DNA of 64,000 nucleotides from Macrostomum lignano (lineage: Eukaryota): the NCBI GenBank assembly GCA_002269645.1, contig NIVC01000070.1, positions 248,001-312,000 on the forward strand. Direction: 5' to 3'. Shown here one piece after another: positions 1-41,484 of the stretch. Position 1 is the first letter of the stretch, and each line of letters begins with the position of its first letter. The notes beneath the pieces are model-generated. The model saw nothing but the letters and a program-made list of their open reading frames with translations, was not told where the DNA came from and searched no databases. Both the position numbers and the translations under genes were made by a program.

Positions 1-437
1 CGAAGGGTTAGAGGATAGAAAGAGAGCAGGGGGCGAGAGCCGGGTGTGTATATGCTCGTAAATACTGCAACCGGTGGGGTGAGAGGGTGGAATGAGAAAG
101 GGGCTGAGTGGGGCTAAGCCATGTGGTGGCTGGAAGTGGGAGGGAAAACTCACTGAGTTGAAGGGTGAGAGAGAGAGAAGGGGGAAGGCTAGCAAATCAG
201 TGCCTCTGCGGCTAGAGACCTGATTGGACGAGCCCAAACGAGAGAGAAACGGAAAGGGAACAGCAACAAGAAAACCAAAGGACAACAAGAATTGCAGCTT
301 TAAGATGAGGGACGGACCAGAATGAACAAGCGGCAGGGAGAGGAGCGGCAGGCTGTACATGTACATGTACGACCGTGAGTACGTTTAAACATTCTCGAAG
401 ACACATTTTAGCAGATCCGAATGTACACAAAACTCAC

Positions 438-3400
438 AGGTATCTGAAGCTTCGTATTTCATCTTGATTCCGAGTGATTGGCTGCTATATGGAATACGCA
501 GATACACGGTCAAGACGTTTTCTGTCGTTATGAAATCCCGCGTGGTGTCCGAGAAGCTGCTCTCGAGGGTAGCCAGAACTGTTGAGCGATAGGCTCCGTC
601 ATACAGAGTGACGCTATCATAACGGGAAGTTAGGTTAAAAAAGGTAAAACGAGCCACCACTCGCTTTGAGGGAGAGACTCTGATCACCCAGTAGCAGTCC
701 GAGCTGATCAAGAAGCCCATAGTTCCTGCAGACGAGTGGCTGACCAGCTCTCCAGTGTCGTTGGTCAGGAGCTCCGTGCCTTGACAGACTGGTGGTAAGT
801 ATAGGTCAATAAAAATATCAAAGCGCTGCTTCATGGTGAAAAATGAACTCTTTTCAAGACTGTGACGTGTCTGCATCAATAGTGTAAGCGGTACAAGCGG
901 ACATGTACATGAATCTATCATTGGGCATTGCAACACGTTTTACAATTTTAACTAATCAAAACTCAGTTTATGAGCCAAAACTTAAGACGAGATTAGATTG
1001 CGCTTGTTTGTCAAAAATGTAGTTACAACTGTAAGCTTTGCTCACATTTTTCGGTTGTGTTGTACTTCACCCCGAAGCCAGAGCCTGTTCCACCCGACGT
1101 GAAATATACAAGCATCGCATTTGACTGTGAAACGAAAACTCTTGAACTGACAATCTGAAATTCACTCCGTCCGTAGTATCTTGCGATGTATGGTGAGCCT
1201 CGAATTCCTTCAGATATGCTGACATAGTCATTGGGGTAGAGGCTGAATGATGTAATGTGAGCCACTACACTGTATCCCAATGGCGCGGTAATGGTCCAGT
1301 AGCATATCATACGTCTCAAATAGTTAGGGGATGATGAGTTCACATGGGCGAAAAACTTGCCTTGGCTGGCTTGAAGAATTTTCCGACCATCACAGACTGG
1401 AAACTGAAAGAATGATAGGTTTTTTCTATCGTGTATGTCCTCTAATCCTCTGAATAAACTCTAACTTACAGTTCTCCGCAATGCTGTATCGCATTCGAAA
1501 GCCGTAGGAATGCCAAGTGGCATCTGTTGTGAACCGGACCCTCATGCTGTTTGTGATGGACCGGTATCCGACCTCTGTCGGAATAGAAGTGCCGCTGACC
1601 AAAGTGTTTGAACCACTGAGACCATCGTATAATGTCACTCTGTCGTACGAATACCCGTGACTCGACAGTTTGTTACTAGTAAACCAGGCGATTACTTGCT
1701 TGCCTGGCGACACAGAAATTTGCCAATTGCATGTCATAGAGTGCAAATAGTGCGTTGTTCCAGCATTGGTGTGAGTAACCACTTCACCGTTGTCGGAGTC
1801 CCATTTCTGAACGCTTGGGCAAGCTAAAATGAAACGTATGATTTAGAAAACAAAGTAAAGTTTCTTAATGGGTTTTAATCGTAGTGCATTAGAGAAATTC
1901 CCCAAACCTTGCTCGTAGTAAAACTGAATAGAGAATCCGATTGATTCATGAAGATTGTCAGTTGTAAACGAAATATGCGCGTCTCCTGTTGTCACCCAGT
2001 GTACGTTTTGGCCGAAATGAGTATTGCAATACTGCAAATCTTTATCACTGCCGGACTCACTGGCAGTTGAGGAAAGCTTCGTTACCATTTTTAGGCAGTC
2101 CCCGTTGCTAAGATAGTAGGTTTCGATAAAGAGATAGATGTAGAATCCAGGTCGTTTGGGCAGTGTCCACAGGCAGGCTAAATTGGGTGCGTATGCGGAC
2201 ATGCTGGTGGCATTGTAGCCTTTGTGGCTCTCGATGACTCCAGATACGTTCGATGAATTTGCATAACTGATCGTTCCGCATGTGTTGTTAACGGCTGAAA
2301 GCAGATAGTAATATTTGTGTTTAGTACGCATATGTACTCGTAATTAGAAAGCGGCCAGTGCTTCAATGAAAAAATGGCTTATCTTGTGTGTGGTGCTGCT
2401 AAGCACAGTTTTTATCATTTTGGCATTGTTGCGCAACATTCCGTTATTAAGCGCAAATATTTTTTAAAATTTCGTTTTTTAGCATTTAAACATATCTGTA
2501 GATATCTATATCTATCTGACGGAAAACTGGGTAAAAATACATTTTCTTGTTTCTTAGTTACTATGCTTTACGTCATATGTGCTTAATGCTTTGCTTACCA
2601 TTGTCAATTTCTTGAAGCCACAATGCAAAGCCATATCCTCCATAGTCACTGTCTGTGTTAAACCGCACAGTCGCCGTGTTTGCTGAGGATACAATAACAC
2701 CTTTAAAATTACTGCCGGAAGTATTGAGCAGAACAGCTGAACCGTTGGAGCCATCAAACACTGTCACTCTATCATTTGTCTGTGTATTGAAGTAAGTAAA
2801 ACGAAAGGCGATTCTCTGTTCGACAGGAACGCTTATGTGCCAGTAGCAGCTCATGTTGTTTAAATAAGGACTTGAACCAACACCGTAGTGACTCCTTATT
2901 TGACTTCCCGTTTTCGTTGCTGTCACGTTTTCAAATCCGTAACAGTCTGAAAAAATATGTTTAAATATATGAGAACTTCCAACGGGGACTGTATTTGGTA
3001 CATGGCTAAATAAACAACTAATACAATAAATAAAGCATCTAAGGTAGAAATATACTTCAAAACTCTGCCAATTTCGACTTCGACGTTAGCGAGACGGAAA
3101 GCTTTTAATTTCTTTTAAAGAAGTATTTTAATTTTCAGAGGTTAATTGAAGGGAGTATTCAGTAGTCCCTGGTTAGTTGTTGCAAAGTTCATAATTTGCT
3201 CTGATTCAAAGAACCCATTGTTGCTCTTTTTGCAACTAGAACACCGGGAAGACGAGACGTTTGTGACTTTCGTTCGATAAAACTTAAGATTTGCTGTCTC
3301 GATTATTTTTTGGCTTGCGGGCGTAGCGCCTTTCTGCTTCAGTTGTTAATGATTAGTTGCAAAAATATTAAGAAAATTGTTTTCAAAACTTTAAACTTAC

Positions 3401-5437
3401 ATAACTGGGTAAAGTTATAATGAAGTCGAAATCCGAGACCTGAGTACATGCTGCTTGTAGTAAATGTTACGCTTACAACACTTGCTGTGGATTGAAACCC
3501 CGACGGCGAAGGCGAATGGCCCCTGCGGAGCGTTGCAATTGTGCTCGAAGACTCTCCCATGTTTCGAGCGCTGACGTAGTCATTGTACCCTAAATTAAAA
3601 TAGGAAAACCAGAACCAAACCTGCTGACCAGGCGGTGCCGTAATGTACCAGACGCACTGTGCATTGTTCCCATAATAGTATTCTCCGACGCCATTGTGAC
3701 TTACTACTTCACCTGTGCTATTAGTCAAGTTGCGTTTGTCTGGGCAGTCTGAAATTTACAAAAATATTTACATTCAATGAAGCCCGCAGAAGAAAGCTAT
3801 ACAAATATAATTTATATTCAAAAGTACTTCAATATTGGATTGTGATGAACACTCCTTAATGTTTGAATAATACAGACCATTCCACTATGTCATGAGTACT
3901 GCATATTCCTCTTTTATCTTAGGTTGCTACAGAGGGAGTACGATGCATGCAAGTATCGATTTTTAACTCGAATTCTTGCTGAAAATTCTTATTTTTAGCT
4001 CATTTTTTGCTTGCAAATCATAACATATACTAGGGTGGCGATAAATCATAGCGACTAAGTACAAAGTACGTGAAACTTTTATAAAAAACCCATAAAAAGT
4101 TTACAAACAAGAAATATACATAAGTAACAAATTAGTGATTGAATCTCATTACAAAACTCACAGTTTTGCAATTCAAACTTGATTTGAAAGCCCGTGGACT
4201 CATAAGCTCCATTGGAACTAAACCTGATGATGAAGTTGCCATCCACCTGAAGTGTCATGCCAGTGACAGCTTTCCAGCCGCACAAATTCACATTAGAACT
4301 GCCACCTGTCACTGACGCTGTGCCTTGATTTACAGACAGGCAATCTCCATTTCCGAGAGACACGTTGCCAACGTAGAGCTGGTAAAACTTTCCGGACACC
4401 GATGGCAAGGTCCAGCTGCATGACATAAACTGTGTTGGTCGTAGCCGGGGTGGCTGACAATCATTCCGGAAGAGTTGGAAGCGTCATCAAACGTGACTGG
4501 TCCGCACGTGCTGCTGTTAGCTGCAGAAATTTGGATTAAGCGAGAAGATGACTGCCATTTATTCAATGTTTACAAAACAAAACCGATATTATCGTCGATG
4601 CACCTCTCAACATGCAATCGCAACTATATGATATTATGATTCAATGATTCACAATCCGATAACACTGGCAACTAACCTGATACGGTGGCGTTATACTCTA
4701 AACGAAATCCTTTTCTTGCGAATTGGCTGTTTGAATAAAAATTCACTGTCAGAATATTTGCGGACGAAACGAATCTCGGCGACTCATAGCCAACTGAGTC
4801 ATTCGCGCTAACGACTGCAATTTCGGATGACGTTGTCAGGCCGTCGTACAGAGACACTCTGTCGTTTGGCGACTCGAGATCCATGTAGGTGAACCAGACT
4901 ATGACTCTCTTGCCAGGTGGCGCATCCAGCTGCCAGTAGCACTGCGAGTTGCTGCTGTAGTTTGTTGTGCCGACTCCGCTGTGACTGGCGATTTCGCCAC
5001 CGGCCTCAGCTGACAGCGCTGGAGCGCGCTGCTGCAGTCTGTTTGGGAATGGTTGGTCCGGTTAGTGAAGGAATATTAATATCGATTGACTATCATATAT
5101 TAGCTGGTCGTGATGCTTAGCTAAAGTAACTTTAAGAAGGCAAATTTCAAGAGCTAAAATAGATTAACTACAGTGATAAAATACAGAAGTGAAGCCGGAA
5201 AAAATGTTTGTTTTAAAATGCTAGTTATCAGCAGAAAACATGAGTAACTCACAGGCAGTTTGACTGCTGCACTTTGGCAGAAAGATCAACAAGGCACAAG
5301 CAACGAAGCCAAGCTCCCAAAGTATTATTTCTGCGACAGAAAAAGTAATAGCTCGTAATCATGGGTAAATTATTAACCAAGTTTGCTATATCTGAGCAAA
5401 TATTTAGGAGTAACTCACTGCGTTCCTGGTAGGCCAT
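438..5437 (-). CDS. Secreted multi-CUB-domain protein (cubilin/tolloid-like CUB array), 3'-incomplete; one or two apparent frameshifts
   Basis: Hand-assembled exons (minus), all introns phase 1 GT-AG: 5437-5419 (MAYQER), 5331-5253 (hydrophobic signal IILWELGFVACALLIFLPKCSSQTA), then CUB exons 5038(or 5018)-4677, 4520-4162, 3748-3401, 2946-2599, 2294-1908, 1823-1470, 1396-1046, 788-438. Each shows CUB hallmarks (C...G.I.SH...Y.NN..C.W.I, D.V..YDG, F.S/T, GF...Y). No further exon found in 1-437. Confidence 0.88.
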
Positions 5438-6333: not shown

Positions 6334-6725
6334 TCATTTAGTGTTAAATATATCTGTTTAAACTGTGCTGTAATATAACGCTGTGCTGTCTAATAAGTCC
6401 AGGGGCTGTTTTGGATTCCGGAGCAGCATTTCAACAGAATTATTAGCATGCTCTATTTTACTTCCTTTTGCTCAGAAGAGTGTTTTGTTACTTTGCTATT
6501 GCGATCGTACTATGTTCTACAAGAAAAATACCAACAACCCGGTGAACAATTACTTTATTTTTCCACGTGCCTCACACTGGAAGTGCTCTATCTACAGTAG
6601 TATTCAGCACTTTTCATGTCCGTCATCGGAATACATATTATCACATTGGTATTGGGTTAACAGTCAGAATATTAGAAGAATGAGAGCAAACTGTTTAACG
6701 AAATTCCCTCGCGCTGCGTTATCGC

Positions 6726-7254
6726 CCCTGGTGCTGGCGTCCCTGGTGCTGGCGCGCCGGGTGCTAAAGCCCCTGGTGCTGGCGCCCCTGGTTCTAAAGC
6801 CCCTGGTGCTGGCGCCCCTGATGCTAAAGCCCCTGGTGCTAAAGCCCCTGGTGCTAAAGCCCCTGGTGCTAAAGCCCCTGGTGCTAAAGCCCCTGGTGCT
6901 GGCGCCACTGATGCTAAAGCCCCTGGTGCTAAAGCCCCTGGTGCTAAAGCCCCTGGTGCTAAAGCCCCTGGTGCTAAAGCCCCTGGTGCTAAAGCCCCTG
7001 GTGCTAAAGCCCCTGGTGCTAAAGCCCCTGGTGCTAAAGCCCCTGGTGCTAAAGCCCCTGGTGCTGGCGCCGCTGGTGCTGGCACCGCCGGTGCTGGCGC
7101 CGCTGGTGCTGGCACCGCCGGTGCTGGCGCCTCTGCTGCTAAAGCCCCTGGTGCTGGCGCCCCTGATGCTAAAGCCCCTGGTGCTAAAGCCCCTGTTGCT
7201 AAAGCCCTTGGTGCTAAAGCCCCTGGTGCTAAAGCCCCTGGTGCTAAAGCCCCA
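6726..7254. repeat. 15-bp minisatellite (CTGGTGCTAAAGCCC)n, copy A
   Basis: Direct tandem units; source of the (LVLKP)n and (APGAL)n ORFs. Confidence 0.97.
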
Positions 7255-8141: not shown

Positions 8142-10695
8142 TTAGGGGACATCGGCCACAGTGTATACTGTATCTTCTTCATAAACCTGAAATAATTAAA
8201 GAAACATGAAAGGTGAGAATCAATTTGAAGACCTCACTAAAATACCAATGGTATTTAAATCCAGAAAAAATATTTTTTTTAAAAATTACCGCTAAGTGCT
8301 CAGATACTCCTTCCGATCTCCTAGGTTCCTGAGGGTTGGTCAGCTGTAACAAAATTTCATTAACTTTTGAATCGTTAAACTGCTTAATATCGAGATAACA
8401 AACAAGTTAGCAACCAACCTCAAGATGATAAGATGACTTTACATCAGTAACAAACGAAACTCGTAACCTTTCACCAGGCGTCTTAGCGAGAGTAGAGGCC
8501 TTTAGACGAAAAAAACAGTGAAAGTTGTATGGCTGGTGAACAAACTACTCAGAAATTTCCATTTGTTTTAATTTACTGATACCAGTTCCTACCTCAGCAG
8601 GTTGATCAACGGGGCGTCTTGGAAGCGGAGGTGCTAGAGCCTAGGGAACATTGGAAAAAAATTAAATGGTTTTTTTGTTCAGTCTGAATGATTTTGAGTT
8701 CATAACCTGAATGGCCTATTACATGTACGCTAGTTTATGTGCTCGAATGGAATTTATGACTCAGATTGTCAAATGCTAAGAGAGAACTTCTCAGGAGTTA
8801 AAATGCTCAGAGGGAATTTCTCAGATGGTCGAGTGCTCATAGGGGATTTCTCAGATAAACAAGTGCTCAGAAGGGAATTCTTAGATTTTCAAGTACTCAT
8901 AGGGGATTTTTCATGTGTTCAAGTGCTCATAGAGGGAATTCAACAGCTGGTCTAGAGCTCATAGGGAACTTCTCAGGTGGTGGTAAAGTGCTCAATTTGA
9001 ATTTCCCTGTTTGCCCTAGGTGAAAATATAAAAACTTCAAACAGGGTCTTGAGATTTCTTGATTGTTTCTCAGTAAATACTATAATTTTATTATTAAACT
9101 GAAGCAAATTCAGCTCGCAGTGCAGCTTACGTCACCGGAGACCTGGGAATTGGCTTCGGGTTCCTCGGTGAGCCAGTCTGAAGTCGAACTCTGATCGGGC
9201 CGCTTCAACAGCAACCTGGCGATGCTGTTGATCTGCGTGTTGAATGGAAAACAGATTCTGACCTTAACTTTACAACCCAGATCCGTGTTTATTTATTTCA
9301 GCAAAAGAACTTCAACACTGCTAAAAAGGTGCATAGCTAATTTCTATAATGTTTAACAGCTTCAAGGAAATGACGAGTACTTTCTTTGCTAAGTTGCAGT
9401 TTCAAGAGCTCTGTGGGACGTTTTAGTTGGTACAAAGATGTGATATGATAGCTGAGATCTCATTTACCATTTGCTACTCGTAGTCTGACACCAAGCTTAA
9501 ATTTTGTTGAAAGTGTTCAAATGCAATATCTCAATTGTTCAACGTAGTTTAGAGTAATCTGTTTATGGGAATAAGGTGCTAAAGCCTTTGGTACTAAACC
9601 AATAGTGCCGGCGCCCCTGGTGCTAAAGCCCCTGGTGCTAAAGTCCATGGTGCTAAAGCCCCTGGTGCTAAAGCCCCTGGTGCTAAAGTCCATGGTGCTA
9701 AAGCCCCTGGTGCTAAAGCCACTGCTGCTAAAGCCCATGGTGCTAAAGCCCCTGGTGCTAAAGCCCTGGTGCTAAAGCCCCTGGTGCTAAAGTCCATGGT
9801 GCTAAAGCCCCTGGCGCTAAAGCCACTGCTGCTAAAGCCCCTGGTGCTAAAGACCATGGTGCTAAAGCCCCTGGTGCTAAAGTCCATGGTGCTAAAGTCC
9901 ATGGTGCTAAAGCCCCTGGCGCTAAAGCCACTGCTGCTAAAGCCCCTGGTGCTAAAGACCATGGTGCTAAAGCCCCTGGTGCTAAAGTTCATGGTGCTAA
10001 AGCCTCTGGTGCTAAAGCCCATGGTGCTAAAGCCCCTGGTGCTAAAGCCCCTGGTGCTAAAGTCCATGGTGCTAAAGCCCTGGTGCTAAAGTCCATGGTG
10101 CTAAAGCCCCTGGCGCTAAAGCCACTGCTGCTAAAGCCCCTGGTGCTAAAGTCCACGGTGCTAAAGCCTCTGGTGCTAAAGCCCATGGTGCTAAAGCCCC
10201 TGGTGCTAAAGTCCATGGTGCTAAAGCCCCTGGTGCTAAAGTCCATGGTGCTAAAACCCCTGGCGCTAAAGCCACTGCTGCTAAAGCCCCTGGTGCTAAA
10301 GTCCATGGTGCTAAAGCCCCTGGTGCTAAAGCCCCTGGTGCTAAAGCCACTGCTGCTAAAGCCAGGTGCTAAAGTCACTGGTGCTAAAGCCCTCGGTGCT
10401 AAATCCCCTCTCCCCGCCTCAGAACTCACCCTGCGCAGGGCAACAGCAACCAAGACAATTTGCAGAATGACACCCAGTAGAAGAATGAAGGCGGCAACTG
10501 GCAGGGCAATGATGATGGTCATGCCCACGTATCTGTCACTGATGTCTGAAACGAGCACAAAATCACGGTGTGATTGGTTTTAATCAGAGCAGATAATAAT
10601 TTTGCTCACGCACCGATCATCACATGTTGCGCTGCCTGCGGCGCAGCAGTGGAACTCGACAAGAACTCGTACTGCCTACTGGGCCTGGAGAGCAT
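8142..10695 (-). CDS. Orphan single-pass membrane protein (~148 aa) with proline- and tyrosine-motif cytoplasmic tail; N-terminus uncertain
   Basis: Exons join in frame with canonical GT-AG sites: 10695-10614 (phase 1), 10545-10430 (TM: MTIIIALPVAAFILLLGVILQIVLVAVALRR), 9232-9131, 8640-8593 (ALAPPLPRRPVDQPAE), 8343-8290, 8186-8142 (VYEEDTVYTVADVP*). The frame is open ~190 nt upstream of the ATG, so extra 5' exons are possible. Confidence 0.72.
8770..9005. repeat. Degenerate ~30-bp tandem repeat (GTGCTCA(G/T)AGGG(A/G)ATTTCTCAG core)
   Basis: About 8 diverged units inside an intron of the membrane-protein gene. Confidence 0.8.
9575..10410. repeat. 15-bp minisatellite (CTGGTGCTAAAGCCC)n, copy B
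   Basis: Same unit and orientation as 6726-7254, with GTCCATGG/GCCACTGC variants; intronic. Confidence 0.97.
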
Positions 10696-13319
10696 CTCAG
10701 TAACTGGCTGGTTGTGTCGTCTGTATCGGTTGTGCTGTCCATTATATGTAGGACCACGATAGAGCGCCTTACAGATAGCAACTAATCCAAAGCTTTGAAT
10801 GCGCTTTACAGTCTCAAAATAGCTATAGAAGATTTGTAAAGCTTCCAGAAATCTATCTGAGCTGCTGCTAAATACACAGCTGTTTTACACGAAGTTCGTC
10901 AATGTCAATATATCGAAGAACTTCGGTTTACCGAATTGAGCTTGTGTTGCTAAAAATAGCTTCATACAGACGGTGAACTTCATGAAGAGCTTAGTATAGG
11001 GTTACTTAATTATTATTGTTTCTTTGCTTTTCTGTACAACACATTTGCTATCTGTAGAACAGATTATAATTTGAAACTTCAGTCAGAAAGATTGTCAGCA
11101 ACATCGCCACGACAATGGCAATGTTGCAATCCGTTGGGCTTCAGAGTCCGGGGTGCAAAACCAAGCCGGTATACCGTATGGATGCCTGCAGCCTTAACTA
11201 CACGACTGTGAAGTAAACCAGCTCGAAACGTTTTGCAAATCTCGACATTTCAATTTTTCTAGAGAACGCATAGCCGGTAATTTGGATTTACACATAGACA
11301 AAATTAGTCCACAAAAATTGTCCATGTACTCGTAGTTGTCCTTACGTTTTGTCTAAAAATGTCTGTTTGTCCCGTTTTGATGTGGACATTTGCTCACTAG
11401 CGAATTCGACCTATTGAAAACGTAGAAGCAATGATCGCCTGGGAGCAGCGTTGTGACAGGCGGTTGTCAAGATTGTCATGCAACATAATTATACGAGTAT
11501 ATCAGAGTTTGACGGTTCAAACTGTAACGAGACTTGATCCCTATGCCTGTGCTTCTATCGTTTAAAACAAATACAACTACCGTTATCTCGATGCCCAGCT
11601 TCTTGTCGTTTTCAAGTGTTGTATTTGTGAACAAGGCATGGTTGACAGCAGTAGAAGACAACCTGCAGGTCATATACGTCGTAGGAGATTAAATGTCAAT
11701 AGAAAATTCCGCAAAAATAGAGGACCTAAGCATTGGGTGAATGTACCTGTAATCCAGAAAGTTCTGACACTTTTTAACTCGGATCAAAAACGAAAGTAGC
11801 TCGTAGCTGCTAACGCAAATTTTGTGTCATTTTGAAGTGGTGTGGCGTATTTTTGCTTTCTAATAAATTCAATCTCGCATATTATTCTCGTGATTTCGTG
11901 CAAAATGATGTCTTTACTTTACCACAGTTGAAAAACATTTGAGAGGGTGAGTTTGTGCCAGCACAGGTCATTTGGAACACAATTTCCTGCGAAGTCACTC
12001 CCATGGTCTTTTCAAGGCAATGCTGTTCTGAAGCCATTGACTGGACGCTCTACTAAGCGATGGGAGAATTGAGTTCCTACAAGTGGAGACTTTAATGCTG
12101 AGAAGGCTGCTTTAAAGGACAATTATTTTTATAAAAGACTATTAGCCAGAAAATTTAGGTTCATACACGTACTATTTATACGAGTATACTTCTTTCAACG
12201 GATGCTGAAATATAAGCTTTGAAGAAACGTACACAATTTGTGAGATAAATATATTCATGCATATAGCTTTCTACGCCGTTTTATTTATTGCCGTGGGTGA
12301 CAGCCTTAACACTCTTAGAAGAAAGTTGGTTTGAGATAGGTAGTTTACTGCTACCAAAGCCCCTTGGCTGGTCATTAATTCTATTACGCAAGATTATACA
12401 CTAAAGAATGAAGGCTGGATGTCAAATAGAGTTGTTCTGAGTTTACGAGTATCACAATAACTGTATTAATCAATTGATTTCTTTACACCTGATTTCCTAG
12501 ATCCTGTGCCTTGGGCTGCTACTCCCGTTTATTTGAGGCAAGATTCCTCTTGTGCAACCTAGCTAGCATTCTATTATGCCAACTCCGTTCAATTTTCTTA
12601 AACGACCCCGACAGATGCTTCAACTGCTCTTTAGTTATAGGAAATCCCACAACGTCTTAACTAAACTACCTGATCTACTGACACTTCTGAAACAAAAAGC
12701 TACTAACAGTAGCGTAAAAGCTAATCTACAGTAGCTAACCCCTTAAACTATGCCCTAATAATACTACATTGTTGACGCTTATGACGTCAATATTTGAAGT
12801 ACGAGAGCTGCGTTATTAATTTGTAAGGCTCTGTAGTGCAGTGCAAGGTGAAGGAATCAACGAATTGTTGGAGACGAAAACTGTTGAGAACATTTCAGCT
12901 GGGGGTTAAATCCAATTAAACCAATGCAGTAGTGCAGAGGCACACAAACAGACGCAGGCAAGAGAAGGGTAAGCGAGCGCAAACAATTTGGCGTGTCGCA
13001 CTGACCAACCCCTTGGCATAAGCCGCGCTCTCGACACGTCAAACTAAAACCAGCAAAAATGGAAGAATAAAAACCCAGCATTAAAACAGCTCTCTGTTGC
13101 TGTGGTAGGAAGCTACAAACAGGGCAGAGAGGCTGACACACCCCGAGTTCAATTAATGCCTTGCGGTATTTTACAAGTTCTACCTACCGTATTTAACGCG
13201 TGCTCGCGGGTTTTAAGCGGCAGAAAGCTTGAAGGCTTCCAGAGTACAAGAGAATACCGATCAAAATAACCTAGCTCATTTTTTACTGCTGGTTAATTGG
13301 CAAGACAGCCAAGAAAGTT

Positions 13320-15946
13320 ATGTCGACAGAAACCTATCGGAACATGAGCCTGTATGGCAACCCCTACCCGGAGCAGATTCACGAGATACCGCTGAATCTG
13401 ATGAACAAACTGTGCAAATCCTTGGATTTCGAGGATAAAAAGGACAAACTTGGTGAGTAGATAAGTTCTTGCTGGACTAAAGTGTACCTTTTTATGCATC
13501 TATTTACACCTATGTACATAAAATCCATCTATTTTATCTACTTCCTCTTTCTATCTACACATCCATCTACTCTAACTATTGTATTACTAATCATATACCT
13601 CATCTACTCATCCATGTACCCATCTACTCATTCATCTACTCCATCTATTTATCTATCTACCCATCTACTTATCCATCTACCCCCATCTACATGTACTTAT
13701 CCATCTCCCCCATTAAAGAATCCGTCCTCTAAGCTCTCCGCTGCACTCTACCCTATGTAAATATCTACCCGTGAAAATAGGCAATTTACCGACACCATGA
13801 AAATGCCAAACAAAAACTCCAACACCCCCAACCAGCCCGAGCTCTCGGCTACGAGAGGTCGCAGTTTCGCCAGTTCGAACGTCACGGCCTGTCGTTCTCG
13901 CGAAGCCTCCTGCAGGACTGGAGCTGCCGCCGGGGCAGCATCAAGGTGTTGTACACCGAGCTGGTCAGGGCCAAACTCATTGAGGAGGCGCTCATGATAC
14001 AGCCTTATGGTTGGTGAAAGAGTAGCATATGAGTTGGTGACTGAAGAAGTTCTTGTTGATGTGTTGGTGACCGAAAAGTTTCTTGTTGATGCGTTGGTGC
14101 TTGAAGAAGTTCTTGTTGATGTGTTGGTGACTGAAGAAGTTCTTGTTGATGCGTTGGTGCTTGAAGAAGTTCTTGTTGATGTGTTGGTGACTGAAGAAGT
14201 TCTTGTTGATGCGTTGGTGCCTGAAGAAGTTCTTGTTGATGTGTTGGTGACTGAAGAAGTTCTTGTTGATGCGTTGGTGCCTGAAGAAGTTCTTGTTGAT
14301 GTGTTGGTGACTGAAGAAGTTCTTGTTGATGTGTTGGTGACTGAAAAGTTTCTTGTTGATGCGTTGGTGACTGAAGAAGTTCTTGTTGATGTGTTGGTGA
14401 CTGAAGAAGTTCTTGTTGATGTGTTGGTGACTGAAGAAGTTCTTGTTGATGCGTTGGTGCTTGAAGAAGTTCTTGTTGATGTGTTGGTGACTGAAGAAGT
14501 TCTTGTTGATGTGTTGGTGACTGAAGAAGTTCTTGTTGATGTGTTGGTGCCTGAAGAAGTTCTTTTAGATGCGTTGGTGACCGAAAAGTTTCTTGTTGAT
14601 GTGTTGTTGACTGAAGAAGTTCTTGTTGATGTGTTGGTGACTGAAGAAGTTCTTGTTGATGTGTTGGTGACTGAAGAAGTTCTTGTAGATGCGTTGGTGA
14701 CCGAAAAGTTTCTTGTTGATGCGTTGGTGCTTGAAGAAGTTCTTGTTGATGTGTTGTTGACTGAAGAAGTTCTTGTTGATGTGTTGGTGACTGAAGAAGT
14801 TCTTGTTGATGTGTTGGTGACTGAAGAAGTTCTTGTTGATGTGTTGGTGCCTGAAGAAGTTCTTGTAGATGTGTTGGTGACTGAAGAAGTTCTTGTTGAT
14901 GTGTTGGTGACTGAAGAAGTTCTTGTTGATGTGTTGGTGACTGAAGAAGTTCTTGTTGATGTGTTGGTGACTGAAGAAGTTCTTGTTGATGTGTTGGTGA
15001 CTGAAGAAGTTCTTGTTGATGTGTTGGTGACTGAAGAAGTTCTTGTTGATGCGTTGGTGCCTGAAGAAGTTCTTGTTGATGTGTTGGTGACTGAAGAAGT
15101 TCTTGTTGATGTGTTGGTGACCGAAAAGTTTCTTGTTGATGTGTTGGTGACTGAAGAAGTTCTTGTTGATGTGTTGGTGACTGAAGAAGTTCTTGTTGAT
15201 GCGTTGGTGCTTGAAGAAGTTCTTGTTGATGTGTTGGTGACTGAAGAAGTTCTTGTTGATGTGTTGGTGACTGAAAAGTTTCTTGTTGATGCGTTGGTGA
15301 CTGAAGAAGTTCTTGTTGATGTGTTGGTGACTGAAGAAGTTCTTGTAGATGCGTTGGTGCCTGAAGAAGTTCTTGTTGATGTGTTGGTGCCTGAAGAAGT
15401 TCTTGTTGATGTGTTGGTGACTGAAGAAGTTCTTGTTGATGTGTTGGTGCCTGAAGAAGTTCTTGTTGATGTGTTGGTGCCTGAAGAAGTTCTTGTTGAT
15501 GTGTTGGTGCCTGAAGAAGTTCTTGTTGATGTGTTGGTGCCTGAAGAAGTTCTTGTTGATGTGTTGGTGACTGAAGAAGTTCTTGTTGATGTGTTGGTGC
15601 CTGAAGAAGTTCTTGTTGATGTGTTGGTGACTGAAGAAGTTCTTGTTGATGCGTTGGTGACCGAAAAGGTTCTTGTTGATGTGTTGGTGACTGAAGAAGT
15701 TCTTGTTGATCTGCTGGTGACTGAAGAATGATCGCTAAAATCAGTTGGTGGCTGAAGAAGTTCTTGTTGATGTATTGGTGGCTGAAGAAGTTCCTGTTGA
15801 TTCGTTGGTACCAATATCCCTGAACCTACAAACTTCCAGTGAGGCCAGTGGCCAGGATTAAGATCCCAGTTCAAGGTTGGGACAAGGAGACCTCGACGGA
15901 AGATCTCGGCTTCGACCTGAAGTACCTTGTGGTCCGAGATGATTAA
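13320..15946 (+). CDS. Small death-domain-only protein (137 aa)
   Basis: Exons 13320-13452, 13836-14009, 15840-15946 (both introns phase 1, GT-AG; 414 nt). Translation: MSTETYRNMSLYGNPYPEQIHEIPLNLMNKLCKSLDFEDKKDKLARALGYERSQFRQFERHGLSFSRSLLQDWSCRRGSIKVLYTELVRAKLIEEALMIQPYVRPVARIKIPVQGWDKETSTEDLGFDLKYLVVRDD*. The pattern LC..LD....LA..LG......F......LL.DW....G....L...L matches death domains (Tube/Pelle/IRAK-like by eye). Confidence 0.8.
13505..13715. repeat. Degenerate (ATCT/CATCTAC)-rich low-complexity tract
   Basis: Visible within intron 1 of the death-domain gene. Confidence 0.75.
14030..15795. repeat. 30-bp minisatellite (GTTGGTGACTGAAGAAGTTCTTGTTGATGT)n, roughly 58 units
   Basis: Fills intron 2 of the death-domain gene; source of the 574-aa and 708-aa repeat ORFs. 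Confidence 0.98.
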
Positions 15947-16749
15947 TTATCGACAGCATCAATTAATTAATGATTGTAATTTTAAATAATGCGCTTAGAA
16001 TTTGTTTTAAATGACGCTTTGTAAACAAATTCAAACTTGATTTTAAATGTGTTGCACAAGCCCTCAACCACTCTTTCACAATGGGTATAAGTACCGATAT
16101 GAATGTACATAAACCAGCATTTCAACGACCCATAATACACTCAGACCCAGTTGCTCTCAGATACAAAATTGACCAGATTTTTCCAGAGAATAAATGCAAA
16201 TAACTCGGTGAGACCAGAACTTTGCTGTTTTTTGATCATGCATCCTTAGAGTCCCGAATCAATTCTTTGGCAAAACACAAGCCTCACTAATTTTAGTGGT
16301 ATTTGTAGAATTTTAGCTATTAGAAACTTATTACACTTCATCTGCTTAAAATACTACTCACTAATTTTATTATATAGGCACACAAATGCAAATTGAAACT
16401 TTATGGAATCTGTCCTACTTTAATTAAAAGAAAAAACAATTTCTCTAAGTGACAAAAGGCTTAAATTTGCACTTGAATGAAAAGGTTAAAATCTTTAATG
16501 ACAATATATTCTAGTTTAATCATACATTCACAGATATGGGCATTGAATGAATATTTGCAGCTAAGTTTAGCGAAGTTTAGATTACACGGATATGAGTATT
16601 GCAATGACTTGAGGCCGATAAAACACACCAACTCATAATTGATGGGTTTAGTGGCAAAAACTATTTGATGGAAAAACTTTAGCTGAAAAAACTAATTCAC
16701 AGTGAGTTACAGCTCTATATGAGTGTTGTATGAGTTCAAGTTGCCGGCT

Positions 16750-17690
16750 CCACATCTGGTCACTCCAGCTCCATTTAGTCACTCTAGTCAATCTATTCAC
16801 TCCAGCTCCATATCTGGATTCTGGTCACTCTAGATCTACTAGTGTATCTCGTCACTCCAGATCTACATCTCGTCACTCCAGTTCTACACATCTCGTCACT
16901 TCAGATCTACACATCTCGTCACTTCAGTTCTACACATCTCGTCACTTCAGATCTACACATCTCGTCACTTCAGTTCTACACATCTCGTCACTTCAGATCT
17001 ACACATCTCGTCACTTCAGATCTACACATCTCATCACTTCAGATCTACACATCTCGTCACTTCAGATCTACACATCTCGTCACTCCAGTTCTACACATCT
17101 CGTCACTTCAGATCTACACATCTCGTCACTTCAGTTCTACACATCTCGTCACTTCAGATCTACACATCTCGTCACTTCAGTTCTACACATCTCGTCACTT
17201 CAGATCTACACATCTCGTCACTTTAGTTCTACACATCTCGTCACTCCAGTTCTACACATCTCGTCACTTCAGATCTACACATCTCGTCACTCCAGTTCTA
17301 CACATCTCGTCACTTCAGATCTACACATCTCATCACTTCAGATCTACATCTCGTCACTTCAGATCTACATCTCGTCACTCCAGCTATACACATCTCGTCA
17401 CTTCAGTTCTACACATCTCGTCACTCCAGTTCTACACATCTCGTCACTCCAGTTCTACACATCTCGTCACTCCAGATCTACATCTCGTCACTTCAGATCT
17501 ACATATCTCGTCACTTCAGATCTACACATCTCGTCACTCCAGATCTACATCTCGTCACTTCAGATCTACATATCTCGTCACTTCAGATCTACACATCTCG
17601 TCACTCCAGATCTACATCTCGTCACCTCAGATCTACATATCTCGTCACTTCAGATCTACACATCTCATCACTTCAGATCTACATATCTCG

Positions 17691-17697
<7 letters not shown>
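16750..17697. repeat. 23-bp minisatellite (CTCGTCACTTCAGATCTACACAT)n with 21-bp variants
   Basis: Direct tandem units immediately 3' of the FBXO21-like stop codon. Confidence 0.96.
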
Positions 17698-27536
<9,839 letters not shown>

Positions 27537-28310: not shown

Positions 28311-28534
28311 AAATCTTACCTATGAGCTGCAATTGCAATAATAAAATAAACGAAATAATTAAAAAAGATATTGATATCACTATTTGCATTAAACTTATTA
28401 CTGATTTCTTTCAGAGAAAAAGCTGTTATATTTATACATCTACAAGTGTCTGGTCCATTAAAGAAACAAAGAAAAAGAGATAACAGTGGCAATAAAATAA
28501 TGAATAGGAATAACAAGAAGTCAATAATTTGCTA

Positions 28535-28900
28535 ATCTGGGTGACATGTAAGCACAGGGAAAGGCGGACTAACGCACCACGCTGCAAGCTATCCCGCACG
28601 GCTGTCCCCTGTTCTTCCTTCCGCAGGGACATCAGGGCGGTGACCATGGCCCCCTCAGCTTTGCCAGGCATTGCTATCTCCGGTGTTGAGAATGCGGAGC
28701 ACTTCATCCGTGAATGCTCAACCACCGAGAATCTCTGCAAGCTCGTCCGCTACCTACGGATGGGCTACGGGGCGAGCGACAGTCCACCTCCTGGACTCTC
28801 CGGGGGGGAGGGGGACCGCAGCACCAGCTGCCTGTGGTTGCCAGGGCTTATAGCGGTATATCCGGGATGCCCAAAACCCCCTGCAGCTGAGTCAAATAAT
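28535..28900 (+). mobile_element. Internally deleted 3'-end remnant of the same LINE family
   Basis: Collinear blocks match 21335-21895 (AAGCACAGGGA, CGCAGGGACATCAGGGCGG, GAGAATGCGGAGCACTTCATC, CGAGAATCTCTGC..GCTCGTCCGCTACCTA, CCCCCTGCAGCT.AGTCAA) with intervening segments missing. Confidence 0.9.
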
Positions 28901-29475
28901 TCACCAGTTCACTGTGCTCCATTCAATACGCAACTAGAAACGCTGGCTGTCAAGAAAGTGCACCAGTGCACTATAAATAACAGAATAACTATTTACAGGG
29001 AAAAAGAAACTGCTATTACAGAATCTGCAAGCCGGTATTCACAGAATACAAATAGCTGTAAGATTAAAAATATTTTTTTATTCTTTAAAAAGAGACAGAA
29101 ACACACGCGGCACTACTCACGGAAATCGTTCGCGATAGTAGTAATATGACAACATCGGTTTCTTTGAAATTTTAAATTAAAGTATCTAAACAAAAGTCCA
29201 AGATTAAATTGAAAGAGAAGTTCTGAACGCAAATATTGGAATAAAGCAACTGACCTACAAATCTCCAATTCTAATAAAATTCAACTCAATGGTGTTGGAG
29301 CATTCATTAATAATATCTCCTGAGCAGTGCCCGAACATCATGGTGTGTGTAACGTGTGAACTTAAAAATATTATTTTCTGCTTGCTCAGATGACCAAAAA
29401 TTTTAGCAGGGGAGCCCGCCGGGCAGGTTGGGGGGATTTAAGACAGGGAGACTCATCTGGACAGCTGGGCCCGGC

Positions 29476-36768: not shown

Positions 36769-37031
36769 CAGACAGCTCCCTGTTCCTGAAGATTCTGATC
36801 TCACAGCTGTTACAGACAGCTCCCTGTTCCTGAAGATTCTGATCTGACAGCTGTTACAGACAGCTCCCTGTTCCTGAAGATTCTGATCTCACAGCTGTTA
36901 TAGACAGCTCCCTGTTCCTGAAGATTCTGATCTCACAGCTGTTACAGACAGCTCCCTGTTCCTGAAGACTCTGATCTCACAGCTGTTACAGATAGCTCCC
37001 TGTTCCTGAAGACTCTGATCTCACAGCTGTT
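36769..37031. repeat. 44-bp minisatellite (CAGACAGCTCCCTGTTCCTGAAGATTCTGATCTCACAGCTGTTA)n, ~6 units
   Basis: Truncated at the duplication junction. Confidence 0.96.
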
Positions 37032-37396
37032 AGATATATACTCTTCTGATATATTCAGTTTATGATTTTCAAATTCAAGTTCGTGAAGTTAAAAAAAAGA
37101 TTGATAATCGAGTATGGCGAGACTGAGACATGCAAAGCTTGGAGATGTCGATCACTACTGGTCGTATTTCAATGAGTGCATGTATTATTGAAGCTAAACC
37201 AGACAGAATAAATGTAAACATTATCCAATACTCGTATTAATGCTTATTTATAGCTAAAAAAATAAAATGCACGTAGGCGAATCCTAATACATTGGTCACA
37301 AGCACGTGCAAACTTCCGGCCGAATGATGATGTACACGTCTGCAGTTCAGTTAAAATGTGCCCCATTTCCCGGGACTTCGATGATGTGGGAATCAG

Positions 37397-39786: not shown

Positions 39787-41484
39787 ATGGAGGACTTTGT
39801 CGCTGGTGCAATTGGCGGTAAATATGGACTGTGAGCTTACACCTATTGCAGACAGCTCCCTGTTCCTGAAGATTCTGATCTCACAGCTGTTACAGACAGC
39901 TCCCTGTTCCTGAAGATTCTGATCTGACAGCTGTTACAGACAGCTCCCTGTTCCTGAAGATTCTGATCTGACAGCTGTTACAGACAGCTCCCTGTTCCTG
40001 AAGATTCTGATCTGACAGCTGTTACAGACAGCTCCCTGTTCCTGAAGATTCTGATCTCACAGCTGTTACAGACAGCTCCCTGTTCCTGAAGATTCTGATC
40101 TCACAGCTGTTATAGACAGCTCCCTGTTCCTGAAGATTCTGATCTGACAGCTGTTACAGACAGCTCCCTGTTCCTGAAGATTCTGATCTCACAGCTGTTA
40201 CAGACAGCTCCCTGTTCCTGAAGACTCTGATCTCACAGCTGTTACAGACAGCTCCCTGTTCCTGAAGACTCTGATCTCACAGCTGTTACAGACAGCTCCC
40301 TGTTCCTGAAGACTCTGATCTCACAGCTGTTACAGACAGCTCCCTGTTCCTGAAGACTCTGATCTCACAGCTGTTACAGACAGCTCCCTGTTCCTTCAAC
40401 GACACAGTTCCAAAGTTATCAGTCCAAACGCATCTTATCAAATTGCAAATCTTCAGGTGCCAGCGGATTATTGATTGGCCACCCTATGGAGGTGATGAAG
40501 GTGCAACTGCAGGTGACCAACGCTGGAGATACTTCTGTGGCGGCTAAGGCCATGCTTAGCAGAGGAGTTTGGCAAGGTAATGAAGAGGCAAATCGGTTCA
40601 TGAATTTAAAAATTCTACATTCCTTATTCATGATCGACCTCCTTTTTCAGGCCTTTTCCGTGGCATGTCAGTGCCTATGGCGTCATTCACGGCGGTGAAC
40701 GCTGTTTTCTTTGGTGTCTATGGCCAAACACTGGCTCTGCTGAGCAGTCTGCGGCCCGACAGTCGCTATGGCAACGTGGCCCTGGCTGGCATGGCTGGCG
40801 GAATGGCCCAGCTGCCTTTGACGGCGCCTTTGGACCTGATTAAAACTGCGATGCAAGCGCAGCTGAGCAGAGTGAGCAGTGAGTGACCCAGAACTTACTG
40901 AGTCTTGCATCACGACCCCTGGTTCGATTCCCAGGCCAACATTCATTTAGGGCTTGCGTGCGCTCAGGAGTCGACGGAATGGGAAGAATTGCCTCAGCAT
41001 TAACCCTTGCACTGCAGATGCAGCGGACGCATTCCATAGAGGCCCAGCCTCTTGCGCAATGGCCATTATTAAACGAGAAGGCCCAGCGGGACTCACTCGC
41101 GGTTTCGCGTTAACTTTCGCTCGCGACGTGCCCTCCTACGGACTGTACATGCTGCTCTACGATTGGCTGTCGGAGCGGATCGGTCACGTGACTGGGGAGA
41201 CGGCCGGCACTCTGCTGGGCGGGGGCATCGCGGGCTTGGTGAGCTGGCTGTCAGTTCTGCCCATAGACACTGTGAAGTCCAACCTGCAAGCCGAGGCTGG
41301 GACCGGATCGATGCGCCGCAGCGGTTTGTCTGTTGCTAAGCGGATTCTGGCCGAGCAGGGCACTGCGGGACTGTACCGGGGCGGCCTGATCGTGGCGGTG
41401 AGGAGTTTCCCGGTCAACGCCGTCACTTTCTTTGTCTGGAGTCGGACGTTGTCGCTGCTGCGGGAAGAGCAACAGCAGTTCTGA
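39787..41484 (+). CDS. Mitochondrial carrier, SLC25A29/45/47/48-like (281 aa)
   Basis: Exons 39787-39817, 40457-40576, 40651-40878, 41018-41484 (all phase 1; 846 nt). Three P.[DE]..K..[LM]Q signatures (PMEVMKVQLQ, PLDLIKTAMQ, PIDTVKSNLQ); GLFRG, RDVPSYGLY, RSFPVNAVTF. Confidence 0.93.
39848..40394. repeat. 44-bp minisatellite, ~12 units, SLC25 intron 1
   Basis: Same unit as 36769-37031. Confidence 0.97.

What the first reader, a model, noticed from the sequence alone, without database searches (positions are those of the whole stretch)
13320..15946. Hidden gene for a stand-alone death-domain protein
Three exons missing from the ORF track (masked by a 1.8-kb intronic array) splice with matching phase-1 junctions into a clean 137-aa ORF. 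It consists of one death domain plus a ~35-aa tail. There is no TIR, kinase, TM or ankyrin module. The spacing resembles Tube/IRAK/MyD88-type domains (my reading). DD-only proteins can act as adaptors or dominant-negative decoys, so this may be an uncharacterised regulator of Toll/TNF-like or apoptotic signalling.
Basis: partly seen in the sequence, partly recalled or inferred. Interest (0 to 1): 0.72.

Follow-up and report, generated by a model that had tools for sequence, protein, structure and literature searches.

The report
Kinase-less IRAK-type death-domain gene
The three exons are a real gene, already annotated in the flatworm Macrostomum lignano, that encodes only the death domain of an IRAK/Pelle-type immune kinase, with the kinase part missing; this is a modest evolutionary curiosity rather than a hidden or new kind of gene.

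Summary
Exons 13320-13452, 13836-14009 and 15840-15946 (+) join through GT-AG introns, both phase 1, into a 137-aa ORF. Intron 2 holds a 59-copy 30-bp minisatellite.

The gene is not hidden. This exact protein is in GenBank (PAA77972.1/PAA91832.1, Macrostomum lignano), from a transcript-derived annotation, and UniRef calls it "Death domain-containing protein".

The domain is specifically IRAK/Pelle-type:
- The only real hit among 1.84 billion proteins is the N-terminal death domain (DD) of a mussel DD+kinase protein (E=1.2e-5).
- PDB hits are the IRAK2, IRAK4, Pelle and IRAK3 DDs.
- hhalign against IRAK DDs gives 97% probability.
- AF2 with an alignment gives six helices, and Foldseek ranks the IRAK2 and Pelle DDs first.
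- Both introns lie at the same codon and phase as in mussel IRAK and vole IRAK2. The gene therefore corresponds to the first three coding exons of an IRAK1/2/Pelle-like gene, ending at a stop in exon 3.

No kinase exon exists anywhere in the 64 kb. Three genomic copies keep the ORF, with 7 synonymous and 3 non-synonymous differences (dN/dS 0.12).

Function is inferred, not shown. I read it as a non-catalytic subunit of DD assemblies, more likely a competitor than a bridge. Published surveys find no TLRs in this species.

The parts
13272..13274 (+). In-frame TAG upstream of the start codon; it closes the frame 48 nt before the ATG
13320..13452 (+). Coding exon 1 (M1 to the first base of Ala45). 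Encodes the N-terminal lead, DD helix 1 and most of helix 2. Donor is TTG|gtgagt, phase 1
   Evidence: Homologous to exon 1 of mussel IRAK and vole IRAK2, where the intron also falls in an Ala codon split G|CN
13453..13835 (+). Intron 1 (383 bp, GT-AG). Contains a short 20/41-bp C/T/A-rich repeat at 13592-13690
   Evidence: Its length is 383, 444 and 383 bp in the three genomic copies
13836..14009 (+). Coding exon 2 (rest of Ala45 to the first base of Val103). Encodes the end of DD helix 2 through helix 6. Donor is ATG|gttggt, phase 1
   Evidence: tblastn with mussel IRAK hits 13829-13981
14010..15839 (+). Intron 2 (1830 bp, GT-AG). Its length varies among copies (1830, 810 and 1148 bp)
   Evidence: Lies at the same position and phase as the end-of-DD intron of mussel IRAK and vole IRAK2
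14029..15809 (.). 30-bp minisatellite, 59.3 copies, unit ATGTGTTGGTGACTGAAGAAGTTCTTGTTG. It is intronic and generates spurious ORFs of 574 aa (+) and 708 aa (-)
15840..15946 (+). Coding exon 3 (Val103 to Asp137, plus TAA). Encodes the post-DD linker (VRPV...) and an acidic tail predicted as disordered. Other in-frame acceptors at 15849 (134 aa), 15870 and 15876; the 15870 and 15876 ones give the 127- and 125-aa products of older gene models
   Evidence: Five of the seven differences between copies in this exon are synonymous
16189..16194 (+). AATAAA, a candidate polyadenylation signal about 245 nt after the stop (inferred only)

Best explanation
This is an expressed three-exon gene of Macrostomum lignano, at NIVC01000070.1 about 261320-263946. 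It encodes a 137-aa protein made of one IRAK/Pelle-type death domain (six helices, about residues 20-102) and a 35-aa tail predicted as disordered.

Its exon-intron structure shows that it descends from the first three coding exons of an IRAK1/2/Pelle-like kinase gene. The linker and kinase exons are gone, and translation ends in exon 3. These points are shown or strongly supported.

The mechanism is inferred. With no catalytic or effector module, the protein can act only through death-domain-to-death-domain contacts. It would enter helical DD assemblies of the Myddosome type, nucleated by another DD protein such as a MyD88-like adaptor or a TNFR/p75-like receptor DD.

It carries no kinase, and no IRAK kinase with a related DD was detectable. 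I therefore think it most likely occupies IRAK-type slots non-productively, as a competitive or capping modulator comparable to IRAK-M or short MyD88 isoforms, rather than relaying a signal.

My confidence in identity and origin is about 0.9. My confidence in the competitor mechanism is about 0.35-0.4.
For: Gene reality:
- The ORF and splice sites are as described.
- An identical protein is in GenBank and UniRef.
- That GenBank annotation was built only from a genome-guided RNA-seq transcriptome (PMC5730564).

Selection: three genomic copies all keep the ORF and splice sites. The diverged copy differs at 10 nt, 7 synonymous and 3 non-synonymous. dN/dS is 0.12, with binomial P=0.0017 against neutrality.

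DD identity:
- Pfam Death, E=0.0047.
- hhalign of the M. lignano-only profile against nine IRAK-family DDs: 97.1% probability, E=6e-11, residues 19-107.
- AF2 with a 36-sequence alignment: pLDDT 81-89 over residues 20-100 and six helices.
- The top 20 or so Foldseek PDB hits are all death domains, led by IRAK2 (TM 0.77, 2.2 A) and Pelle.

IRAK type:
- The single-sequence PDB search hits only the IRAK2 and Pelle DDs among death domains.
- The exhaustive phmmer search of 1.84e9 proteins finds one genuine outside relative, the N-terminal DD of a 984-aa DD+kinase protein of the mussel Potamilus streckersoni (E=1.2e-5, 34% identity).
- The profile search ranks IRAK2, IRAK4, Pelle and IRAK3 far above MyD88 and RIPK1.

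Origin:
- Intron 1 splits the aligned Ala codon in phase 1 (G|CC here, G|CT in mussel, G|CC in vole IRAK2).
- Intron 2 is phase 1 in the first codon after helix 6 in all three genes.
- Snake IRAK4 has its internal DD intron elsewhere, in phase 2.

Stand-alone status:
- tblastn with the mussel IRAK finds only the DD exons in the 64 kb.
- The next gene downstream is on the opposite strand in all three copies.
- Retaining intron 2 would give a stop after 2 codons.
Against: - The Pfam Death score (17.5 bits) is below the curated cut-off of 22.6.
- The Trp that is invariant in helix 2 of all nine IRAK-family DDs compared is Lys41 here.
- AF2 without an alignment gave pLDDT 40.
- The alignment that rescued the AF2 model consists mostly of IRAK2, IRAK4 and Pelle DDs. 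The Foldseek ranking within the DD superfamily is therefore partly circular.
- I did not see RNA-seq reads myself.
- The selection test rests on 10 substitutions between copies that show mosaic, gene-conversion-like divergence.
- No orthologue was found in any other flatworm.
- Published surveys report no TLRs in M. lignano (PMC8609888) and no IRAK family in other flatworms (PMC4484250). The pathway it would modulate may not exist in canonical form.
- No binding partner, expression pattern or phenotype is known.
Confidence: 0.6

Rival explanations
1. It is a Tube-like positive adaptor. The kinase-less IRAK-family DD would bridge an upstream DD protein (MyD88-like or a receptor DD) to a downstream DD kinase or other effector. 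The short acidic tail would serve as a docking peptide.
For: Drosophila Tube shows that an IRAK-family DD without a kinase can be an essential positive adaptor (my knowledge of the family). The DD is under purifying selection, including the tail exon, where 5 of 7 differences are synonymous. The tail is retained in all three copies.
Against: No DD+kinase protein of M. lignano with a related DD appeared in the exhaustive search. Tube DD is not hit by sequence and is only Foldseek rank 17-18, TM 0.47. Intron 1 matches IRAK2 and mussel IRAK, not IRAK4, the clade Tube is assigned to. No recognisable docking motif: the PxQxxD stretch is PxRxxD in the other copy.
Confidence: 0.2
2. It is a DD adaptor or regulator of a TNFR/p75-like or cell-death pathway. 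In a lineage that lost TLRs, the IRAK-derived DD would have been re-used for a different DD receptor.
For: M. lignano is reported to have a TNFR homologue with a probable intracellular DD, plus TNF ligands (PMC7519573), but no TLRs (PMC8609888). FADD and CRADD are reported absent in flatworms (PMC11463336), which leaves DD receptors without known adaptors. p75NTR DDs are the next-best non-IRAK hits.
Against: There is no direct evidence of any partner. IRAK-type DDs are not known to bind TNFR-type DDs (my knowledge). The sequence similarity to p75 DD is weak (E about 0.01).
Confidence: 0.12
3. It is a transcribed relic. The truncated remnant of a decayed IRAK gene would still be spliced and annotated but have no function.
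For: The kinase part is lost. The invariant helix-2 Trp is replaced by Lys. The Pfam score is sub-threshold. No orthologues were detected elsewhere. The rest of the canonical pathway is reported missing.
Against: The ORF, both introns and all splice sites are intact in three copies. There is an excess of synonymous changes (7:3, dN/dS 0.12, P=0.0017). An IRAK-like fold is still confidently modelled.
Confidence: 0.08
4. It is the N-terminus of a larger protein. Further exons (kinase or other) would lie outside the model or the window, and the 137-aa form would be a minor isoform.
For: IRAK genes normally continue after this exon, and the mussel gene spans 44 kb. Several in-frame alternative acceptors exist at exon 3. 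A possible acceptor upstream of the ATG (ttttttactgctggttaattggcaag|ACAGCC) leaves the frame open for 18 nt.
Against: No kinase similarity anywhere in 13 kb upstream or 48 kb downstream, on either strand. The adjacent downstream gene is convergent. The transcript-derived models in all three loci end at the same stop. The stop is conserved in all copies.
Confidence: 0.04

Closest known systems
IRAK1/IRAK2/Pelle-type kinases (N-terminal death domain); nearest sequence is the Potamilus streckersoni DD+kinase protein KAK3601769.1
   Same: The DD sequence is similar (34% identity, E=1.2e-5 in 1.84e9 proteins). The fold is six-helical and closest to the IRAK2 and Pelle DDs. Both DD introns are at the same codon and phase. 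The post-DD linker starts V-x-P-V in both.
   Different: There is no ProST linker, kinase domain or C-terminal region; the protein stops 35 residues after the DD. The invariant helix-2 Trp is Lys.
Drosophila Tube (kinase-less IRAK-family DD adaptor)
   Same: The architecture is the same in concept: an IRAK-family DD that has lost the kinase and can act only through DD contacts.
   Different: Tube is not detected by sequence and is structurally more distant. Tube carries C-terminal Tube repeats and is regarded as the IRAK4 orthologue. The intron pattern here matches IRAK2 and mussel IRAK, not IRAK4. This looks like an independent kinase loss.
IRAK-M/IRAK3 and short dominant-negative isoforms of Myddosome components (for example MyD88s)
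   Same: These are non-catalytic or truncated components that join or block DD assemblies and dampen signalling. This is the behaviour I propose. The IRAK3 DD is hit at E=0.002.
   Different: IRAK-M keeps a pseudokinase domain, and MyD88s keeps its TIR domain. Here only the DD is left, as a separate gene rather than a splice isoform. An inhibitory role is untested.
MyD88 death domain
   Same: It belongs to the same superfamily and the same type of helical DD oligomer.
   Different: There is no TIR domain. The match to MyD88 DD is only marginal (E=0.055) against 1e-7 for IRAK DDs.

Membership tests
Death domain (Pfam PF00531, DD superfamily) | Profile match at or above the curated Pfam gathering score | tested here: not met
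   17.5 bits against a cut-off of 22.6, E=0.0047. The paralogue scores 14.2 bits.
Death domain (Pfam PF00531, DD superfamily) | Significant homology to bona fide death domains by more sensitive sequence methods | tested here: met
   phmmer E=1.2e-5 to the mussel IRAK DD in 1.84e9 proteins. The PDB profile search hits IRAK2, IRAK4 and Pelle at about 1e-7. hhalign gives 97.1% probability, E=6e-11.
Death domain (Pfam PF00531, DD superfamily) | Six-helix bundle fold | tested here: met
   The AF2 model built with an alignment has helices 25-35, 38-47, 52-58, 65-75, 80-89 and 93-102, with pLDDT 81-89. Foldseek top hits are all DDs. Caveat: the single-sequence model was poor, and this is a prediction, not an experiment.
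IRAK/Pelle kinase family | N-terminal DD of the IRAK subfamily | tested here: met
   IRAK2, IRAK4, Pelle and IRAK3 are the best PDB matches, and other DD classes score at least 1000-fold worse. The best structural matches are the IRAK2 and Pelle DDs.
IRAK/Pelle kinase family | Ser/Thr protein-kinase (or pseudokinase) domain C-terminal to the DD | tested here: not met
   The protein ends at residue 137 and Pfam finds only Death. tblastn with the mussel IRAK kinase finds nothing in the 64-kb window.
IRAK/Pelle kinase family | Shared gene structure (intron position and phase) in the DD-coding region | tested here: met
   Both introns are phase 1 at the aligned Ala and at the first post-helix-6 codon, in M. 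lignano, mussel IRAK and vole IRAK2. IRAK4 shares only the second intron.
IRAK/Pelle kinase family | Assembly into a Myddosome-type complex with MyD88 and other IRAK DDs | not testable with these tools
   No partner sequences of M. lignano could be retrieved, and no multimer prediction or binding assay is available.
Tube (Drosophila-type kinase-less adaptor) | Tube-type DD and C-terminal Tube repeats; IRAK4-clade ancestry | tested here: not met
   Tube DD is absent from the sequence hits and is Foldseek rank 17-18 with TM 0.47. There are no repeats in the 35-aa tail. Intron 1 differs from that of IRAK4.
MyD88 | DD followed by a TIR domain | tested here: not met
   No TIR hit. MyD88 DD scores E=0.055.

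The most novel reading that the evidence does not exclude
In a flatworm lineage that has lost Toll-like receptors and, apparently, IRAK kinases, the death domain of the ancestral Pelle/IRAK1-like gene was kept as a free-standing protein under purifying selection. It was re-wired to a different death-domain partner, for example the TNFR/p75-like receptor, in animals that also lack FADD and CRADD. If so, it is a new minimal adaptor or gatekeeper of flatworm stress, immune or cell-death signalling, not a mere Myddosome decoy.
Probability: 0.15. Interest if true: 0.6.

Novelty: new variant of a known kind. Interest (0 to 1): 0.38.

Why it matters
Flatworms are textbook examples of loss of the Toll pathway. 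Published surveys report no TLRs in M. lignano and no IRAK family in the flatworms examined.

This gene is a clear molecular remnant of an IRAK gene in an early-branching flatworm. Its IRAK ancestry is shown by conserved intron positions, it has been reduced to the death domain, and it is still under constraint.

It offers a second, independent example, after Drosophila Tube, of an IRAK-family member that lost its kinase. It also gives a concrete handle for asking what death-domain signalling does in a regenerating animal without TLRs, because M. lignano is amenable to RNAi and transgenesis.

It is not a new kind of system. The gene itself is already in the databases under a generic name.

Tried and rejected
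- AF2 on the single sequence gave pLDDT 40 and was unusable.
- The word-indexed homologue search found only the species' own copies with the protein alone. With a three-sequence profile it added one mollusc-like fragment.
- After I seeded that search with IRAK2, IRAK4 and Pelle segments, it returned only short fragments of vertebrate and fly IRAK DDs and no new flatworm relatives. These were useful only as an alignment for AF2.
- Two of the four exhaustive-search hits (P0005, P0007) are translated tandem repeats and were discarded.
- I looked for kinase or other IRAK exons in the window by tblastn and found none.
- I looked for expression data under the gene identifiers Mlig018393 and Mlig009956. 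There was nothing in the paper library or in the supplements of two M. lignano transcriptome papers.
- I considered the 574-aa and 708-aa ORFs across the minisatellite as coding and rejected them. They are pure 10-residue repeats created by a 30-bp period, they lie inside an intron whose length differs between copies, and the exon-2 frame stops two codons into the array.
- I considered the 125- and 127-aa models (acceptors 15876 and 15870). I prefer 15840 because it is the transcript-derived model and it restores the V-x-P-V linker that begins the homologous exon 3 of mussel IRAK.
- A TRAF6-type motif in the tail (PVQGWD) was rejected, because the key position is not Glu and it varies (Q/R) between copies.
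Full report
**Observation.**
- Exon 1 is 13320-13452 (ATG ... CTTG|gtgagt).
- Exon 2 is 13836-14009 (aaccag|CCCGAG ... TTATG|gttggt).
- Exon 3 is 15840-15946 (ttccag|TGAGGC ... TAA).

The exons are 133, 174 and 107 nt long. They join in phase 1 at both junctions to give a 414-nt, 137-codon ORF.

An in-frame TAG lies 48 nt upstream of the ATG. Read-through of either donor terminates within two or three codons.

Intron 2 is nearly filled by a 30-bp minisatellite of 59 copies at 14029-15809. Its period is a multiple of three, which explains the 574-aa and 708-aa pseudo-ORFs that mask the gene in a mechanical ORF list.

**Source and prior annotation.** The 137-aa translation is identical to GenBank PAA77972.1 and PAA91832.1 (BOX15_Mlig018393g2 and BOX15_Mlig009956g1) of Macrostomum lignano. 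UniRef names it 'Death domain-containing protein'.

The window is NIVC01000070.1, about 248001-312000, of assembly Mlig_3_7.

That GenBank annotation was produced solely from a genome-guided RNA-seq transcriptome, using StringTie/TACO plus a de novo assembly (PMC5730564). The junctions are therefore transcript-derived, although I could not inspect reads myself.

Older WormBase-type models of 127 and 125 aa use the in-frame acceptors at 15870 and 15876. So the gene is real, but it is not 'hidden' in the sense of unannotated.

**Copies and selection.** The assembly holds three copies.
- L002 (NIVC01000713) has an identical CDS, but its intron 2 is 810 bp and its intron 1 is 444 bp.
- L003 (NIVC01003966) has an intron 2 of 1148 bp and 10 CDS differences, 7 synonymous and 3 non-synonymous (A45S, Q114R, D136N).

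For L003 against the window copy, dN/dS is 0.12. The binomial probability of at least 7 synonymous changes out of 10 under neutrality is 0.0017. Five of the seven differences in exon 3 are synonymous, which supports that exon's frame.

Divergence is mosaic. Intron 1 is nearly identical between L001 and L003, yet it is diverged between L001 and L002, whose CDS are identical. This suggests gene conversion among homeologous copies, so the test is indicative rather than strong.

In all three loci the downstream neighbour is a convergent gene with Transglut_core2 and YccV-like domains, FBXO21-like.

**What the protein is.**
- Pfam finds only Death (E=0.0047, 17.5 bits), below the gathering score of 22.6.
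- A single-sequence search of PDB sequences hits the IRAK2 DD (E=0.006) and the Pelle DD (0.3) as the only death domains.
- An exhaustive phmmer search of 1.84 billion representative proteins finds one genuine relative outside the species. This is the N-terminal DD of a 984-aa Death+kinase protein of the mussel Potamilus streckersoni (E=1.2e-5, 34% identity over residues 19-108). The other two hits are translated tandem repeats.
- A small profile ranks the IRAK2, IRAK4, Pelle and IRAK3 DDs at 1e-7 to 2e-3. p75NTR, UNC5, RIPK1 and MyD88 score 0.01-0.06, and Tube is absent.
- hhalign of the M. lignano-only profile against nine IRAK-family DDs gives 97.1% probability and E=6e-11.
- AF2 without an alignment failed, with pLDDT 40.
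- With a 36-sequence alignment it gives pLDDT 81-89 over residues 20-100, six helices (25-35, 38-47, 52-58, 65-75, 80-89, 93-102) and a tail of pLDDT below 50, read as disordered, from residue 106.
- Foldseek against the PDB returns death domains only in the top 20 or so. They are headed by the IRAK2 DD (3mop_K, TM 0.77, 2.2 A), the Pelle DD and the IRAK4 DD.

That alignment is dominated by IRAK DDs. The intra-superfamily ranking is therefore not independent evidence, but the DD fold is well supported.

One oddity: the Trp that is invariant in helix 2 of all IRAK-family DDs compared is Lys41 here.

**Gene-structure test.** I compared intron positions across four genes.
- In the mussel IRAK gene, exon 1 ends in phase 1 inside Ala39 (G|CT). 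Exon 2 ends in phase 1 inside Val101 (G|TC).
- In the window gene, exon 1 ends in phase 1 inside Ala45 (G|CC). Exon 2 ends in phase 1 inside Val103 (G|TG).
- BLASTP aligns A45 with A39 and V103 with V101.
- Vole IRAK2 has the same two introns: Ala32 split G|CC, and a phase-1 split of the first codon after '...QIVLS'.
- Snake IRAK4 shares only the end-of-DD intron. Its internal DD intron is about 11 residues further on and in phase 2.

Two exact matches of position and phase within about 100 codons are very unlikely by chance. The window gene therefore corresponds to coding exons 1-3 of an IRAK1/2/Pelle-like gene.

Exon 3 begins with the homologous linker (V-R-P-V against V-N-P-V in mussel). 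This favours the acceptor at 15840. In the flatworm gene, exon 3 runs into a stop after 35 codons.

**Is it truly stand-alone?** tblastn with the whole mussel IRAK finds only the two DD exons in the 64 kb, with nothing from the linker or kinase on either strand. The stop is conserved in all copies. The neighbouring downstream gene is convergent. Retention of intron 2 would also give a DD-only product...QPYGW*. A larger isoform cannot be excluded without long-read cDNA, but nothing supports one.

**Context from the literature.**
- TLRs were not found in the M. lignano genome (PMC8609888).
- IRAK-family proteins and TRAF6 were reported absent from the triclad and parasitic flatworms examined (PMC4484250).
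- FADD and CRADD are reported absent in flatworms (PMC11463336).
- A TNFR homologue with a probable DD, and TNF ligands, are reported for M. lignano (PMC7519573).
- I found no paper that mentions this gene.

**Mechanism (inference).** A 137-aa protein with one DD and a tail predicted as disordered can act only through homotypic DD contacts.

I commit to this reading: it is a non-catalytic subunit that occupies IRAK-type positions in helical DD assemblies. It has no effector module, and no related DD-kinase was detectable in the species. So it more likely limits or caps such assemblies, in the manner of IRAK-M or MyD88s, than relays a signal.

The alternatives are:
- a Tube-like bridging role;
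- re-use with a TNFR/p75-like DD;
- a transcribed relic, which is less likely given the selection signal.

**Verdict.**
- The gene is already annotated under a generic name, and its function is untested.
- It is a new variant of a known kind, of moderate interest mainly for the evolution of Toll/IRAK signalling in flatworms.

Noticed in passing
window 14010-15839; L002 10752-11561; L003 10691-11838: The intron-2 minisatellite is a length-variable array: intron 2 is 1830, 810 and 1148 bp in the three genomic copies. Each 30-bp unit contains TTG|GTGAC, which resembles the true donors (TTG|GTGAGT, ATG|GTTGGT), so there are dozens of potential cryptic 5' splice sites directly downstream of the real donor.
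   Followed up: partly
L001, L002 and L003, gene region (window 13320-15946): Divergence among the three copies is mosaic. L001 and L002 have identical CDS but 8 mismatches and a 61-bp indel in intron 1. L001 and L003 have a near-identical intron 1 but 7 differences clustered in exon 3. This suggests gene conversion or recombination between homeologous copies of this neopolyploid genome.
   Followed up: partly
window 13440-13442 (Lys41 codon): The helix-2 Trp that is invariant in all IRAK-family death domains compared (xxWxxLA) is replaced by Lys in all three copies. The structural consequence is unknown.
   Followed up: no
window 18280-21805 (+); fragment at about 28430-29150: A degenerate non-LTR retrotransposon (Exo_endo_phos_2 endonuclease, RT-like ORFs, RNase H) is split over several frames. 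It lies inside the span annotated for the convergent FBXO21-like gene. A second fragment with similar C-terminal residues lies near 28.5-29.1 kb.
   Followed up: partly
window 17691 to about 27455 (-): The downstream convergent neighbour is a 678-aa protein with Transglut_core2 and YccV-like domains (FBXO21-like). This gene pair is conserved in all three genomic copies.
   Followed up: partly
window 385-4426 (-): A series of exons each appears to encode a CUB domain: Pfam CUB E=3.5e-8 for 388-936, and the other ORFs look similar by eye. No gene was called there in the locus listing, which covers window 3320 onward.
   Followed up: partly
window 40954-41481 (+), 43482-44063 (-), 48637-55387 (-): Other coding exons are present: a mitochondrial carrier (Mito_carr), a fibrinogen C-terminal domain, and a cohesin-loading-factor (MAU2/SCC4-like) gene. 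The last hit is on 49806-50327; the 48637-55387 span and its interruption by several minisatellites are read from the ORF and repeat lists.
   Followed up: partly
whole window (for example 6724-7253, 9613-10409, 16846-17695, 23010-25210, 36769-37032 and 39849-40395, 47875-48696, 50349-51155, 51529-52237, 54034-54989): Tandem repeats are extremely dense: 39 TRF rows with score at least 150. Many have periods divisible by three and create long repetitive pseudo-ORFs on both strands. The same 15-bp unit occurs in two arrays (6724-7253 and 9613-10409), and the same 44-bp unit in two arrays (36769-37032 and 39849-40395).
   Followed up: no
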